Below, piece after piece: positions 1,413 to 63,736 of a DNA stretch of 64,000 nt; positions within the stretch are counted from its first letter, which is position 1, and each line of letters begins with the position of its first letter. The stretch is from positions 186,001-250,000 of the IMG/VR virus record IMGVR_UViG_3300028177_000001. One strand, 5' to 3'. Position numbers and translations under genes: made by a program. The notes under the pieces are model-generated. The model searched no databases and was not told where the DNA came from. It saw only the letters and a program-made list of their open reading frames with translations.

Positions 1413-1477
1413 GGGGGACTCCCGGGGAGCTGGCGCTCCCTACACAGATCTTACGTCGGAACCCAGGGCGGGGAACC

Positions 1478-1720
1478 CTACAACCGTGCGGTGCCGTAGT
1501 TGTTCATCCGCACGGGGTTTGTCAGGACCCACTGGCCGCATAGGTTCAGCTCCCCGTGCCACTCCCACCGGACCAGGTACGAGTTTGCCACAAGTCGGGA
1601 CGGGGTGTTGTTCCACGCCGCCTCGGGGCTTCCCATCGAGGGCCTGGATGCACGATGTAGCTCCTCTGGAAGAGGCTCAACATCCGGGGGAACTGTGTGG
1701 GTGAGCCAGACGTACAGCAC
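1478..1720 (-). CDS. small hypothetical protein between the two CobT halves
   Basis: GTG-start ~80 aa ORF after an AGGAAG RBS-like sequence; no recognised motif. Confidence 0.4.
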   Translation of the reverse strand: MLYVWLTHTVPPDVEPLPEELHRASRPSMGSPEAAWNNTPSRLVANSYLVRWEWHGELNLCGQWVLTNPVRMNNYGTARL

Positions 1721-1733
1721 AAGGGTCTTCCTG

Positions 1734-2921
1734 TCAGTCGGGCTCGACCAGAGCGAACTCGAGGTCCTGGACTCCGGTCTCGTTGTCGGGCAGGCCAGCG
1801 CGGATGACTTCCACCTCACGGCCCTTGTGGGGTCCGGCCTTCAGGGTGGCGCGGTCGCCGACCTTAAAGACCTGGTGCTTGGAGGACGGGCCTCCGCCAC
1901 CCTCGCCTTCCTGCTCGGGCTCGGCACTCCCGCCACCCTCGCCTTCGTCTTCGCCCTCTCCGGGCTCGCTGCCCTCGTCGCCCTCGTCACCCTCGTCACC
2001 CTTGTTGGGCTTCGGCTCAGGCTTCGGCTTCGGGGGCTCCACTGCGGTCTCGGCGATGAGAGCGACCACTTCCATGGCCAGCCACATGCCGGACAGGTCC
2101 GGCTCAGCCGGAAGGTCGATGGCGCGGTCCATCAAGGGGCGAAGCGGTCCCCTCTCCACGAAGAGGTAGCCAGCGGGGTTCGCCTCCTTGTAGCCCTTCA
2201 GGGCGGTCACCTGCAACGGGGTGGTGTAGCCCAGGCCCAGATCCCGGAAGACTCCCATCACCACGCTCATCGCCCCCTGGGGAGCGGGCTTGCCGCCCTT
2301 GCCCGCCTTGAGGCGTCCCTCCTCTTCCTGCTCGAGAATGAGGTCCTGGAGGCACTCCATCTTGTTCAGAGCACCAGGGAAGTCCTCGCAGCCCCGACGC
2401 TCGATGCGCACGTCGTCGATGAGGTTGTCCCAGTGGAGGAGCATTCCCGTCAAGGGGGCCCAGCCTCGGTGACCGTTCGCCGGGTCGTAGGGGATCGCGG
2501 TCCAGTGGTCCAGGACCTTCGGCCACACCTCGTTGATGTGGATCCGAGTCCGACGGCTGTACTTGGTGTGCCAGGCTTCGTGGTAGCCACCCCCGACCAG
2601 GGCATAGGCCAGCTTCTTGTACAGGTCGTCCGGAGTACTGGCGATGGTGATGCCAGGGTTGTGGACCACGCTGGCGTTTGCCTTCGCTACCCAGCCCTCC
2701 ACATCGCGCCGACCGGGCGTCAGGGAAGGGTTCAGCTTTGCCCACTCGCACATCGCCGCCATGAAGGCTCGAGCCGTCCAGCCGTCTCGGTTCAAGAACC
2801 GAGCCCCGCGACTCACGACCGACCGCACGTTTGGACCGAGGACCGCGTCCACGGTTGCCTGGTGCGTGTTCCGCCAGCGCTGTCCCTTGAAGGCTGCCGG
2901 TCCCTTGCTTGTGCGCTTCAC
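1734..2921 (-). CDS. CobT N-terminal-like protein (HExxH metallopeptidase-like domain, acidic linker, small SH3/KOW-like C-terminus)
   Basis: GGGYHEAWHTKYS motif, E/G-rich linker, position directly downstream of a CobS-like ATPase. Confidence 0.7.
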   Translation of the reverse strand: MKRTSKGPAAFKGQRWRNTHQATVDAVLGPNVRSVVSRGARFLNRDGWTARAFMAAMCEWAKLNPSLTPGRRDVEGWVAKANASVVHNPGITIASTPDDLYKKLAYALVGGGYHEAWHTKYSRRTRIHINEVWPKVLDHWTAIPYDPANGHRGWAPLTGMLLHWDNLIDDVRIERRGCEDFPGALNKMECLQDLILEQEEEGRLKAGKGGKPAPQGAMSVVMGVFRDLGLGYTTPLQVTALKGYKEANPAGYLFVERGPLRPLMDRAIDLPAEPDLSGMWLAMEVVALIAETAVEPPKPKPEPKPNKGDEGDEGDEGSEPGEGEDEGEGGGSAEPEQEGEGGGGPSSKHQVFKVGDRATLKAGPHKGREVEVIRAGLPDNETGVQDLEFALVEPD

Positions 2922-3046
2922 TGTACACTCCTCCCAGTCATCTGAGTTACGTCTGAACCAGCCTCGGGGAAGCCTCCCAGAAATAACCCAGAAATAGACG
3001 CTGAAGCTGCTGCCTCCGCGTACGAGGCTGGACTCGGTTCTCGACC

Positions 3047-3289
3047 CAGCCTGGCCAGTTCCAGTAAGGTTTTGCCCCTGCAGAGTACTGGCTCGTCCTC
3101 CCCACTCCGACCCCCTGCCGAGAGGGCGCGAAACGCCTCCTCGGCCCTGGGTTCTCTGGCCAAAGACTGGGGGGTCGGAGTGGCTGGAGACGAGGCCCCT
3201 CCTCCCCGTAGACCAGCAGGAAACCGAACTGGGCTCCTGCCTCCGCCTGGCCAGTTCCAGTTGGGTCTTGCCCCTGCAGAGTACTGGCT
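3047..3289. repeat. imperfect ~45-bp direct repeat, two copies 196 bp apart
   Basis: GCCTGGCCAGTTCCAGT(AA/TG)GG(TT/TC)TTGCCCCTGCAGAGTACTGGCT ending at 3093 and 3289. Confidence 0.9.
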
Positions 3290-61875: not shown

Positions 61876-62008
61876 TCCTTGAACACGGTCCCAGGCTCTA
61901 CTCGGACCGACTTCGGAACCCCGTCGAGACCAGAGAACTTGAGGTAGCTTCGAGGCTTCTTGTTGGTGCCCCGGTTCACGCTGTCCGTAATCTCTACGTG
62001 CAGCCAGT

Positions 62009-62800
62009 TCATGGAGCCTTCCTTGCGATGCGCGGATCCTTCGGTCCTTCGACCTCCTGGACCTTTACGCCGTTCTCGCGGAGATACTCGACCCCCGCCT
62101 TGCCCCCGAGGTAGCCTCCGTCTACGACGATGACCTTGGTGATGCCCGCGTGGTGGATGAGCTTGGCGCACATCATGCAAGGCTCCGCCAGTACAATCAA
62201 CCAGGCACCCGCCGTCTGCACCCCGCCTGCCGCTGCGTTGCACACGACGTTCATCTCGGCGTGGTGGCATCCCCGCTCCATCCGGGTGCCGGACTCGATG
62301 GGTGGGTGCTTCTCTACGAGGTCAGCTGCGTATGCTTCTGCCTTTGCCCGAGCCGTCTCCCCCTTCAGGTCCAGGGGCTTGCCTGTCTCCAACATCTGGA
62401 TCTGCTTGCCTGTCGCGGCTTGCTTGTTCGCCATGTCATCGAGGATCGTCCGCTCGAACCAGGCCAGGATCCCATTACGCTTCGGGTCTACGCCCTCGCC
62501 CACCAGAGAGTAGACGCCCACGCCCTGGACCCCCCTGCTGCCTGCCCCGAAGGAACGAGGCAGGTGGCGATAGGACTCGCGAATCTCAAGGTCTTCTGCT
62601 TTGACGCCGTTGCGTTCGCAGTAGTGTCCCTTGCAGAGCTTGCCAGAAGCTCCTCGGGGCCCGCCGTTGTACCCGTCCGCCAGGATTACGTTGCGTTTCG
62701 GGTCGATTAGCATCGCCGCCAGCTTCCGCCGGGGACAGTGGCTGGCCTTTGCGAGACTGAGACACTGCTCGATGCGAATCTGAATGTGGTTCGGCTTCAT
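62009..62800 (-). CDS. dCMP deaminase with a large internal insertion
   Basis: SHCPRRKLAA, GYNGGPRG, HAEMN, EPCMMCAK. Confidence 0.9.
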   Translation of the reverse strand: MKPNHIQIRIEQCLSLAKASHCPRRKLAAMLIDPKRNVILADGYNGGPRGASGKLCKGHYCERNGVKAEDLEIRESYRHLPRSFGAGSRGVQGVGVYSLVGEGVDPKRNGILAWFERTILDDMANKQAATGKQIQMLETGKPLDLKGETARAKAEAYAADLVEKHPPIESGTRMERGCHHAEMNVVCNAAAGGVQTAGAWLIVLAEPCMMCAKLIHHAGITKVIVVDGGYLGGKAGVEYLRENGVKVQEVEGPKDPRIARKAP

Positions 62801-63249
62801 GAGAAGGGATACCCGGACCGGTCCTTTGCTTATACTCCCCGAGGGCAGGAGCGAACATGAAGAACCTTCGTAAGATCCTCGCTGAGGAGGGCTTCTGACC
62901 GTCAGGATCAGGAGAGGGAGACCGCTGAGGCTCTCGACCGAGTCTTGTCCGACCTCCTCACCGGAGACCTCAACCGTTCGGCCATGAACAAGTTCGAGAA
63001 GGAGGTGAAACGGAGTCGGCCCATCGATGCTCTCGAGGCCATCTCTACTTTCGCCCACAGTGGCTGGAGCGAGGGGCTGCGTCAGGGTGCGAGCGCGGCC
63101 CACAGCCTTGCACGGGAAGTACGGGCGGGGATTCTCGACCGCTCTATCCTGAAGCCTGTCAGCGAGCACAGCCTGCACGGCGAGACCGCAATGCTCTTCT
63201 GGCTCCTTACCGAGGTCTTCCCGGACTGAGCTGCCGAGGCGCAGGCAGT

Positions 63250-63543
63250 TCAGGCAGCCGCGACCCGGATCCAGCCGCTGGTCTTCCAGCAGTCCTCGTC
63301 GCCCACGTCGGTCCACCCAGTGCCGACGACGACCAGGCCAGCGGCCTCCGCAGCGGCGACCACGTCGGCGATCGGAGTCTCCACGCTGCCCCAACCCTGG
63401 ACCGAGACGTGGACCTCACTCTCAACAGCCTCCCAGTGAGGGGCGGTCGGGACCCAGCGGCTCCCAGGACGGACGACGGGGACGCGGTCGAGGCAGTCGC
63501 GGACGGGGGAGACGGCGGCGGTGACGAGGGCGAGGAGGTCCAT
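63250..63543 (-). CDS. hypothetical protein
   Basis: Behind a promoter motif. Confidence 0.6.
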   Translation of the reverse strand: MDLLALVTAAVSPVRDCLDRVPVVRPGSRWVPTAPHWEAVESEVHVSVQGWGSVETPIADVVAAAEAAGLVVVGTGWTDVGDEDCWKTSGWIRVAAA

Positions 63544-63574
63544 GGTGTTTCCGGGGCGCGGGGGTTCACCTCTA

Positions 63575-63736
63575 TTACGCCCGGAACCCGCCGAGGGAAC
63601 CCTCAGGGAACAACCACTGAATGAAGTCGTGGACCTCCTCCATCTGGTCGTCCGAAAAGGCGAGGATGTGCCCCAGGTTGCGACCCGACGAACCAGCAGG
63701 CCCGTTGTCTCTGTAGAAGTCGATGAGGGCGCTCAT
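63575..63736 (-). pseudogene. truncated OGFr-N-like fragment (53 aa)
   Basis: LIDFY ... DQMEEVHDFIQWLFP, then runs into the promoter motif and stops at its TAA. Confidence 0.65.

What the first reader, a model, noticed from the sequence alone, without database searches (positions are those of the whole stretch)
1451..63602. 15-copy phage promoter GG(G/C)TTCCC-N15-CGTAA with near-invariant spacing
Seen: 12 exact GGGTTCCC-N17-TAA copies, 2 GGCTTCCC variants and 1 copy with a 16-nt spacer. All have CG before TAA, and all point toward a gene start within about 60 nt (at 40227 the TAA overlaps the ATG), including one plus-strand copy before a plus-strand gene. Known: a bipartite motif with a 17-nt spacer and a CGTA-type -10 element resembles ECF-sigma promoters. 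Inference: a regulon read by a phage-encoded or specific host ECF sigma; it defines the accessory/early gene set, including CobS/T, E1, JAB and bL12.
Basis: partly seen in the sequence, partly recalled or inferred. Interest (0 to 1): 0.68.

Follow-up and report, generated by a model that had tools for sequence, protein, structure and literature searches.

The report
Huge-phage promoter set with own sigma
The 15 repeats are copies of a promoter used about 55 times by an uncultured marine phage of at least 377 kb, and the best candidate reader is a divergent ECF-like sigma factor that the phage encodes about 72 kb beyond the window.

Summary
The window holds 12 GGGTTCCC-N15-CGTAA copies, 2 GGCTTCCC variants and 1 N14 copy, against 0 expected. 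The window lies in a 288-kb viral contig that continues into an 89.5-kb contig, so the phage is at least 377 kb. Genome-wide there are about 55 copies with consensus RRGGGTTCCC-N13-GACGTAAY. Nearly all are intergenic, co-oriented with the next gene and 16-60 nt before its start. One sits 13 nt before a tRNA. None lie in the structural module. It is therefore a promoter class.

No phage RNA polymerase was detected. The phage encodes a 303-aa sigma2+sigma4 protein with an extra N-terminal domain, and its fold matches ECF sigma factors. At least 145 relatives occur in metagenome assemblies, several on contigs of 170-350 kb. Four related huge phages with an ortholog each carry their own abundant bipartite motif. 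All four keep a CG(A)TA -10 core; three keep the spacing and one is 1 nt longer. Their -35 blocks differ. This mirrors a near-invariant sigma2 and a variable sigma4.

Sigma dependence and start sites are inferred, because no RNA data exist. This is a new member of a known kind. Interest is moderate.

The parts
1451..1478 (-). Promoter copy, GGGTTCCC-N15-CGTAA. First gene downstream is a CobT-like VWA protein that starts at 1412 and runs off the window start.
   Evidence: 28.8 bits; gene; Pfam VWA/CobT_C
2947..2974 (-). Promoter copy, GGCTTCCC variant. First gene is 1734-2921 (395 aa, no Pfam match).
   Evidence: (27.5 bits)
4577..4604 (-). Promoter copy. First gene is 3290-4525, an AAA_5 ATPase (CobS-like) with an N-terminal Ros/MucR zinc-finger domain.
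   Evidence: (30.0 bits)
21016..21043 (-). Promoter copy heading a run of about 15 kb of mostly minus-strand genes, starting with 20338-20952.
   Evidence: (26.5 bits)
24127..24154 (-). Promoter copy, GGCTTCCC variant. First gene is 23730-24101 (123 aa).
   Evidence: (29.5 bits)
28887..28914 (-). Promoter copy. First gene is 28525-28866 (113 aa), followed by tRNA-Arg(CCU) at 28412-28487.
   Evidence: (30.7 bits)
36509..36536 (-). Promoter copy. First gene is 35912-36487, ThiF/E1-like.
   Evidence: (25.4 bits); Pfam ThiF 105 bits
38556..38583 (-). Promoter copy. An ATG with a GGAG-type site lies 22 nt downstream, before small ORFs and gene 38282-38482.
   Evidence: (28.1 bits)
39666..39693 (-). 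Promoter copy. First gene is 39424-39639 (71 aa).
   Evidence: (30.7 bits)
40227..40253 (-). Promoter copy with a 14-nt spacer; it can also be read as GGGGTTCC-N15. First gene ends at 39694, and its likely start is the GGAG-preceded ATG 23 nt downstream, not the ATG that overlaps TAA.
   Evidence: (14.9 bits in the N15 register)
47310..47337 (-). Promoter copy. First gene is 46903-47286 (127 aa).
   Evidence: (30.8 bits)
51501..51528 (-). Promoter copy. First gene is 51093-51476 (127 aa). An AAA ATPase at 48505-49776 lies further down the same gene run.
   Evidence: (28.8 bits)
54476..54503 (-). Promoter copy. First gene is 54006-54452, a ribosomal protein bL12-like protein.
   Evidence: (28.3 bits); Pfam Ribosomal_L12 36.5 bits
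57195..57222 (+). The only plus-strand copy. First gene is 57243-57575 (+, 110 aa).
   Evidence: (25.9 bits)
63575..63602 (-). Promoter copy. First gene is 63250-63543 (97 aa).
   Evidence: (28.5 bits)

Best explanation
The motif is a class of phage promoters. Host core RNA polymerase is directed to them by a phage-encoded, divergent ECF-like sigma factor of 303 aa. This protein (P0001) is encoded on the adjoining contig of the same genome, about 72 kb beyond the window end. Its sigma4 domain would read the upstream block (GGGTTCCC, the -35 element). Its sigma2 domain would read the downstream block (GACGTAA, the -10 element with a CGT core). Transcription would then start a few nucleotides after TAA, giving very short leaders that run straight into the ribosome-binding site. 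About 55 such promoters drive the non-structural part of the genome. That part includes CobS/CobT-like, E1-like and bL12 genes, DNA ligase, helicase, nucleotidyltransferases and tRNAs. The structural module uses other signals.

Shown: the motif statistics, its placement and orientation, the one-genome linkage, the sigma-like fold, and lineage-specific motif versions in relatives. Inferred: that this sigma, rather than another, reads the motif; the start sites; and the timing.
For: Motif statistics. There are 14 N15 copies in the window against 0 in shuffles. The contig has 45 weight-matrix hits against 0 in the reversed control, 43 of them intergenic although only 9.5% of the contig is intergenic. 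The adjoining contig adds 12 distinct copies. A de novo search for paired 5-mers ranks TTCCC-N15-CGTAA first, 39 observed against 0.21 expected.

Placement. Copies are co-oriented with the next gene and lie 16-60 nt before its start. The copy at G000 20156-20183 lies 13 nt before a tRNA gene, so the signal acts on transcription, not translation. No copy lies between 32 and 160 kb apart from one chance-like in-gene hit; that region holds the terminase and portal genes.

No phage polymerase. No Rpb2 or Rpb1 domains were found, which points to host core enzyme plus sigma factors.

One genome. G001 overlaps the end of G000 by 152 bp. Three other assemblies span the junction at 99.9% identity, and both contigs come from one sample.

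The sigma protein. It gives a weak Sigma70_r2 match. Its family profile matches a solved sigma-H chain, 3mzy, at E=1.5e-4 across sigma2 to sigma4. The AlphaFold model has pLDDT 85. Foldseek's top hits are ECF sigmas at probability 0.99: M. tuberculosis SigH, Bartonella EcfG, E. coli sigmaE and AlgU. By domain, the best matches are Z 8.7 for sigma2 and Z 9.1 for sigma4, and every listed match is a sigma factor.

Relatives. Four phages with orthologs at about 48-51% identity each have their own top bipartite motif. G006 has GGGGGTTCC-N-CCGTA (32 copies). G005 has GGGGGGTTCAACTC-N-CCGTATA (18). G008 has CCCGTTAAAAC-N-CCGTAAG (17). LR745208.1 has CTAAAAA-N-CCGATAGG (46). The -10 core is kept in all four; the spacing is kept in three and is 1 nt longer in G005. 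The -35 block varies.

Matching pattern in the protein. Of the 27 invariant columns in the family alignment, 22 lie at residues 116-213, which cover sigma2 and the short stretch after it. None lie in sigma4, residues 226-303. The sigma4 recognition helices fall into groups that match the -35 type.

The other sigma. The RpoD-like sigma of this phage has no counterpart in those four relatives.
Against: No transcription data exist, because only DNA runs hold this sequence.

The relatives were chosen because they carry the sigma. Co-occurrence is therefore by construction, and the covariation rests on five lineages.

One relative fragment (G007, 68 kb) shows no such motif. In a distant one (G023) the motif geometry differs.

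The -35 block lacks the AAC core of classical ECF promoters.

The sigma scores below Pfam thresholds (14.6 against 24 bits) and carries an uncharacterised domain of about 115 aa at its N-terminus.

The phage has two more sigma-like proteins and at least one further candidate promoter class, so the pairing of sigma to motif could be different.

The sigma gene itself lies 4.2 kb downstream of a motif copy on the same strand. What first switches it on is therefore unknown.
Confidence: 0.65

Rival explanations
1. The motif is a promoter read by a host alternative sigma factor (ECF or sigma28-like) that the phage exploits. The phage ECF-like sigma would serve other promoters.
For: The motif of the related phage LR745208.1 (CTAAAA-N15-CCGATAGG) has the same geometry as the bacterial sigma28 consensus TAAA-N15-GCCGATAA; the motif is and the consensus is from my own knowledge. 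The host is unknown. The phage sigma gene lies behind a motif copy, so some other factor must start the cascade.
Against: The -35 block differs sharply between related phages. That would need a different host sigma for each, whereas each phage carries its own sigma with a variable sigma4.
Confidence: 0.13
2. The motif is read by the phage's RpoD/RpoS-like sigma (302 aa, G000 180502-181410, about 5 kb before the window start).
For: It is a complete sigma with regions 1.2, 2, 3 and 4. It is encoded inside the motif-rich region. The genome has no canonical TTGACA/TAnnnT promoters for it to use (10 hits against 18 in the control).
Against: Its region 4.2 keeps the RE-R-V-RQ residues that read TTGACA in E. 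coli sigma70; the sequence is and the comparison is from my own knowledge. It has no homolog in G005, G006, G007, G008 or the first 400 kb of LR745208.1, all of which except G007 carry a version of the motif. Its gene lies downstream of a motif copy at G000 184377-184404.
Confidence: 0.12
3. This is sigma appropriation of the T4 MotA/AsiA kind. The upstream block would be the binding site of a phage activator, and the downstream block a -10 element for the host primary sigma.
For: The upstream block varies between lineages while the downstream block is conserved. That pattern would also fit a fast-evolving activator working with a conserved host sigma.
Against: GACGTAA is not a TAnnnT-type -10 element. 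No activator candidate was identified, and I did not search for one specifically. A sigma of the right type is present in every lineage examined.
Confidence: 0.05
4. The motif is not a promoter. It would be an RNA processing site, an operator for a repressor, or a dispersed repeat.
For: No start-site data exist.
Against: The motif has two blocks with a fixed gap and an unconserved spacer. It has strict orientation with genes and a fixed short distance to ribosome-binding sites. It also occurs before a tRNA and is absent from coding sequence.
Confidence: 0.03

Closest known systems
Classical ECF (group 4) sigma factors and their promoters (for example E. coli sigmaE, M. tuberculosis SigH, B. 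subtilis SigW)
   Same: The protein has a two-domain sigma2+sigma4 fold. The promoter is bipartite with a rigid 16-17-nt gap and a CGT core in the -10 element. The sigma gene lies downstream of one of its own putative promoters.
   Different: The -35 block is GGGTTCCC, not a GGAAC/AAC type. The protein is below Pfam thresholds and has an extra N-terminal domain of about 115 aa. No anti-sigma factor was identified. The regulon is a large share of a viral genome, not a stress regulon. The published ECF classification states that phage ECFs and divergent ECFs were not captured (PMC7826278).
Phage-encoded sigma factors that switch transcription to phage promoter classes (SPO1 gp28, T4 gp55, the ECF-like sigma of phiEco32; from my own knowledge, with SPO1 also in PMC13401047 listed)
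   Same: A phage-encoded sigma redirects host core polymerase to a phage-specific consensus that is repeated many times before phage genes.
   Different: This is a different protein family, found only in uncultured huge phages. Among 50,697 phage records only LR745208.1 has a homolog. The consensus also differs, and the genome holds three sigma-like proteins.
Sigma28/FliA promoters (TAAA-N15-GCCGATAA; from my own knowledge)
   Same: The relative LR745208.1 uses CTAAAA-N15-CCGATAGG, which has the same geometry and nearly the same -10 element. The window's GACGTAA is one base shorter than CCGATAA.
   Different: The window's -35 block bears no resemblance to TAAA. The phage sigma lacks a sigma3 domain.

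Membership tests
Sigma70-family-dependent promoter | Two conserved blocks separated by a spacer of fixed length and free sequence | tested here: met
   Of 37 genome copies with at most one mismatch, all have N15. Two further copies have N14 or N16. The spacer columns carry no information.
Sigma70-family-dependent promoter | Location upstream of genes and in their orientation, outside coding sequence | tested here: met
   43 of 45 weight-matrix hits are intergenic, although intergenic DNA is 9.5% of the contig. All are co-oriented with the next gene and lie 16-60 nt from its start. One precedes a tRNA.
Sigma70-family-dependent promoter | Transcription starts a few nucleotides downstream of the -10 element | not testable with these tools
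   Only DNA sequencing runs from marine metagenomes hold this sequence; there are no RNA runs.
ECF-type promoter | CGT core in the -10 element | tested here: met
   CGTAA is invariant in 37 of 37 copies. A CG(A)TA core is kept in four related phages.
ECF-type promoter | AAC core in the -35 element (GGAAC type) | tested here: not met
   The -35 block is GGGTTCCC. In relatives it is GGGGGTTCC, GGGTTCAACT, CGTTAAAA or CTAAAAA.
ECF-type promoter | 16-17 nt between the -35 pentamer and the CGT of the -10 element | tested here: met
   GGTTC-N17-CGTAA in G000, G006 and G008, and N18 in G005.
ECF (group 4) sigma factor (protein P0001) | Only sigma2 and sigma4 domains, with no sigma1.1 or sigma3 | tested here: met
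   In the AlphaFold model, residues 118-201 match sigma2 (5uxx_C, Z 8.7, rmsd 2.5, 79 aligned). Residues 223-303 match sigma4 (3mzy, Z 9.1, rmsd 3.0, 72 aligned). No sigma3 domain is present. An extra N-terminal domain occupies residues 1-115.
ECF (group 4) sigma factor (protein P0001) | Sequence-profile membership (Pfam Sigma70_r2 and Sigma70_r4/r4_2 above threshold) | tested here: not met
   Sigma70_r2 scores 14.6 bits against a cut-off of 24, and there is no r4 hit. The family profile does match the sigma-H chain 3mzy at E=1.5e-4 over sigma2 to sigma4.
ECF (group 4) sigma factor (protein P0001) | Co-encoded anti-sigma factor or other dedicated regulator | not tested
   Neighbouring genes have no informative Pfam hits. 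The N-terminal domain could act as a regulator, but this is speculation.
Sigma28/FliA-type promoter | TAAA -35 element and GCCGATAA -10 element with a 15-nt gap | tested here: not met
   The window motif has GGGTTCCC and GACGTAA. Only the relative LR745208.1 fits this pattern.

The most novel reading that the evidence does not exclude
A clade of uncultured huge phages (roughly 180-620 kb) carries a private family of ECF-like sigma factors with an added N-terminal domain. In this family the sigma4 domain and the -35 block have diverged together from lineage to lineage, while sigma2 and the CG(A)TA -10 core stayed fixed. If so, nature has produced a series of mutually orthogonal sigma/promoter pairs. 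Each pair would run most of the non-structural genome of its phage, within a cascade of up to three phage sigma-like proteins and without any phage RNA polymerase.
Probability: 0.4. Interest if true: 0.62.

Novelty: new member of a known kind. Interest (0 to 1): 0.48.

Why it matters
The motif gives a first map of transcription units for a phage of at least 377 kb in which most genes have no known function. It also assigns a likely job to a protein family with at least 145 members that current ECF classifications miss. If the pairing of sigma and motif holds, the lineage-specific versions would be a natural set of orthogonal sigma/promoter pairs. Such a set is useful for studying how promoter specificity evolves, and possibly as parts for genetic circuits. 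The finding also shows that this huge phage relies on host core polymerase retargeted by its own sigma factors, not on a polymerase of its own.

Tried and rejected
**RNA evidence.** The run search found only DNA holders from marine metagenomes; contigs cannot show starts.

**Close relatives.**
- megablast of 20 kb of the window found nothing among phage records.
- The RpoD-like sigma has only relatives of 37% identity or less in IMG/VR and about 40% or less among phage records.

**Motif elsewhere.**
- A literature search for the motif string returned only unrelated eukaryotic and viral hits.
- The exact motif in the closest TerL relative, LR745208.1, gave 0 hits; that phage has its own version.
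- The exact or relaxed motif in 23 IMG/VR relatives matched only G006, G003 and G011. De novo motif search was needed to find the other versions.

**Other transcription signals and enzymes.**
- Canonical sigma70 promoters or intrinsic terminators near the sigma gene: none found.
- TTGACA/TAnnnT promoters genome-wide: not enriched.
- Phage RNA polymerase: Rpb2 and Rpb1 domains absent. The T7-type search had no working control, so it is uninformative.

**Other dead ends.**
- G001 was first taken for an independent relative. This was rejected: it is the continuation of the same genome.
- A 16-copy 'motif' in G015 turned out to be a CRISPR-like repeat array, not a promoter.
- No JAB domain was found in five genes next to ThiF.
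- The ENA contig could not be searched through the genome search because the record is not held. Junction-spanning loci were used instead.
- The host was not identified.

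
Full report
**1. The observation**

The window holds 12 copies of GGGTTCCC-N15-CGTAA, 2 of GGCTTCCC-N15-CGTAA and 1 of GGGTTCCC-N14-CGTAA. Fourteen are on the minus strand and one is on the plus strand. The N15 pattern never occurred in 100 dinucleotide-preserving shuffles. The octamer alone occurs 20 times against 4.9 expected.

Aligning all genome copies extends the consensus to RRGGGTTCCC-N12-(G/C)GACGTAA(Y). T4, T5 and C6-C7 of the first block and CGTAA of the second are invariant, and the spacer carries no information. 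A weight matrix from these copies finds the same 15 sites in the window and no weaker ones. It gives 45 hits in the whole contig and 0 in the reversed-sequence control.

**2. Where the window lies**

The window is bases 186001-250000 of a 288,255-bp viral contig with 62% G+C (G000). A pattern scan of IMG/VR found one other contig rich in the motif, the 89.5-kb G001.

G001 is not a relative. Its first 152 bases match the last 152 of G000. Both contigs come from the same sample. Three other assemblies cross the junction at 99.9% identity, one of them a 350-kb contig. The phage genome is therefore at least 377 kb.

The sequence occurs in marine and seawater metagenomes from 11 studies, all DNA. 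The nearest terminase is that of the uncultured 485-kb phage LR745208.1 at 54% identity. Next is an Acidobacteria jumbo phage at 28%. The host is unknown.

**3. What the motif is**

I called genes from codon bias; 378 genes cover 90.5% of the contig. Every motif copy but one is intergenic or at a gene edge. Each points the same way as the next gene and ends 16-60 nt before its start, usually 20-26 nt. A GGAG-type ribosome-binding site begins about 10 nt after CGTAA. The exception is a one-mismatch N14 hit inside a gene at 104882, which looks like chance.

The copy at G000 20156-20183 ends 13 nt before a tRNA gene, so the signal concerns transcription, not translation.

Copies cluster at 14-31 kb and 160-275 kb of G000 and across G001. 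None lie in the long minus-strand block at 32-160 kb, which holds the terminase and portal genes.

First genes behind copies in the window:
- a CobT-like VWA protein;
- an AAA_5 ATPase with a Ros/MucR domain (CobS-like);
- a ThiF/E1-like protein;
- a bL12-like protein.

First genes behind copies elsewhere include a DNA ligase, a helicase and a poly(A)-polymerase-family (PolyA_pol) nucleotidyltransferase.

All this fits a promoter class for the non-structural genes. I found no JAB domain in the genes I scanned.

At 40227 the ATG overlapping TAA is probably not the start codon. A GGAG-preceded ATG lies 23 nt further on.

**4. Which polymerase reads it**

No multisubunit polymerase domains were found in G000 or G001. 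The T7-type search had no working control. The genome encodes three sigma-like proteins:
- (a) A 302-aa RpoD/RpoS-like sigma with regions 1.2, 2, 3 and 4, about 5 kb before the window.
- (b) A 202-aa protein with only region-4-like helix-turn-helix units, next to a NusG/KOW-like gene in the structural block.
- (c) A 303-aa protein in G001 (P0001) with a sub-threshold Sigma70_r2 match.

Protein (c) belongs to a family of at least 145 proteins in metagenome assemblies, several on contigs of 170-350 kb. Some are labelled 'sigma24 family' by JGI. Evidence on its nature:
- Its family profile matches a solved sigma-H chain at E=1.5e-4 across sigma2 to sigma4.
- The AlphaFold model has pLDDT 85.
- Foldseek's top hits are ECF sigmas at probability 0.99.
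- Residues 118-201 match sigma2 domains with Z up to 8.7.
- Residues 223-303 match sigma4 domains with Z up to 9.1. The matches include sigmaE region 4 on -35 DNA and sigmaE region 2 on -10 DNA.

These Z values are moderate for helical domains. However, every listed match is a sigma factor and both domains match in the right order. Residues 1-115 form an extra domain with no counterpart in the matches.

**5. Linking sigma (c) to the motif**

I fetched relatives that carry an ortholog and searched each for over-represented pairs of 5-mers at gaps of 12-20 nt.

| Phage | Top bipartite motif | Copies |
|---|---|---|
| G000 + G001 (this phage) | RRGGGTTCCC-N13-GACGTAA | about 55 |
| G006 | GGGGGTTCC(C)-N14-CCGTA | 32 |
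| G005 | GGGGGGTTCAACTC...TCTCCGTATAGG, 1 nt longer gap | 18 |
| G008 | CCCGTTAAAAC...CTGCTTCCGTAAGTAGGTG | 17 |
| LR745208.1 (first 400 kb) | CGATTTCnCTAAAAA...CGTGCCGATAGGGT | 46 |

In LR745208.1 each copy lies about 20-25 nt before a start codon.

Across the four relatives the -10 core CG(A)TA is kept, while the -35 block changes. The distance from -35 to -10 is kept in three and is 1 nt longer in G005. The protein family shows the same asymmetry. Of 27 invariant alignment columns, 22 fall at residues 116-213, covering sigma2 and the short stretch after it. None fall in sigma4.

The sigma4 recognition helices also form groups. G005, G007 and G008 share A-R/W-M-L-R-x-I-R-E; G005 and G008 have GTT(C/A)AA-type -35 blocks, and no motif was recovered from the 68-kb G007 fragment. 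G001 and G006 have different helices ending in R-R or R-K, and both have GTTCC-type blocks.

The RpoD-like sigma has no homolog in any of these relatives.

This pattern is what co-evolution of a phage sigma with its promoters would produce. It is hard to reconcile with a single host sigma.

Limits of this evidence:
- The relatives were selected for having the sigma.
- Only five lineages were compared.
- The 68-kb fragment G007 shows no motif.
- The distant, AT-rich G023 has CCCCC-N12-GATAA with a different geometry.

**6. Comparison with known systems**

The geometry GGTTC-N17-CGTAA and the CGT core fit ECF promoters. The missing AAC core does not. The protein has the ECF two-domain build but fails Pfam thresholds and has an added N-terminal domain.

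The current ECF classification says that phage ECFs and divergent ECFs were not captured and that N-terminal extensions are uncommon (PMC7826278). Phage sigmas that retarget host polymerase to phage promoter classes are long known; SPO1, T4 and phiEco32 are examples from my own knowledge.

I therefore rate this a new member of a known kind, with a divergent sigma family and a new consensus. The motif of LR745208.1 resembles the sigma28 consensus, which is a lead for the origin of the family's -10 specificity.

**7. Open points**

- The sigma gene lies 4.2 kb downstream of a motif copy on the same strand. This is compatible with ECF-style autoregulation but leaves the first trigger unknown.
- No canonical sigma70 promoters are enriched in the genome.
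- A second candidate class, GGGGG(T/C)(C/T)-N15-18-GGTA, has the same geometry. Of its 21 hits, 17 are intergenic, and it also occurs in the structural block. It may belong to another of the three sigma-like proteins.

**8. Verdict**

That the motif is a promoter is close to certain (about 0.93). That the phage's own ECF-like sigma reads it is the best-supported reading (about 0.65) but is not demonstrated. Timing and start sites are untested.

Noticed in passing
window 19156-19182, 23665-23692, 31658-31684, 56717-56742, 60291-60317 (all - strand); also G000 23687, 42558, 49862, 131556, 136027, 152870, 158414: A second candidate promoter class, GGGGG(T/C)(C/T)-N15-18-GGTA, has the same offset between blocks as the main motif. 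Of 21 hits in G000, 17 are intergenic (intergenic DNA is 9.5% of the contig), against 11 hits in the reversed control. It also occurs in the structural block.
   Followed up: partly
G000 288104-288255 and G001 (L069) 1-152; L312, L313, L316: The window's contig and a second IMG/VR contig are one genome of at least 377 kb. Three other assemblies span the junction, and an ORF of 3,712 aa crosses it.
   Followed up: yes
L009 997-1905 (-) = G000 180502-181410; L010 1183-1791 (-) and 1788-2333 (-) = G000 117761-118911: The phage encodes two further sigma-like proteins. One is an RpoD/RpoS-like sigma of 302 aa just before the window. The other is a 202-aa protein with only region-4-like units, next to a NusG/KOW-like gene; this pair is conserved in G005 and LR745208.1.
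   Followed up: partly
window 28412-28487, 32674-32746, 58815-58890, 59930-60011 (- strand); G000 250-272 kb: ARAGORN finds 43 tRNA genes in G000, four of them in the window. One, at G000 20066-20142, has an odd anticodon loop and lies directly behind a motif copy.
   Followed up: partly
window 3290-4525 (-); L061 2348-3856 (-): A Ros/MucR-type zinc-finger domain is fused to the N-terminus of the CobS-like AAA_5 ATPase. A second such domain occurs in a 502-aa protein elsewhere in the genome.
   Followed up: no
window 35556-35828 (-): A 90-aa ORF matches only a short stretch of family A DNA polymerase, directly after the ThiF/E1 gene. Other assemblies of the same phage aa plus 81-84 aa at this place.
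   Followed up: no
window 15943-17391 (-), 6753-7853 (-): The window also encodes a type IB topoisomerase-like protein and a protein with a histidine-kinase/GHKL ATPase domain.
   Followed up: no
G000 144318-144481 and 51620-51763; G001 45817-45970 and 89012-89170: A repeat of about 150 bp (84-90% identity) forms the start of several otherwise different ORFs. It may be a mobile or homing-type module.
   Followed up: no
L179 about 7615-8123 (G015, IMGVR_UViG_3300013121_000030): A related huge phage carries a CRISPR-like array of identical 36-nt repeats at about 72-nt spacing. It first showed up as a false 'bipartite motif'.
   Followed up: no
window 11708 (+), 18628 (+); G000 42556 (-), 96039 (-), 145787 (-), 259120 (+): A third short intergenic motif, GGTA-N4-6-GCCTAT(C), recurs before genes. 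A similar GGTATTGTGGGATAAC lies before the sigma gene in G007 and G008.
   Followed up: partly
L141-L160 (LR745208.1, first 400 kb): The 485-kb relative has 46 copies of CTAAAAA-N-CCGATAGGGT, which closely resembles the bacterial sigma28 promoter consensus.
   Followed up: partly
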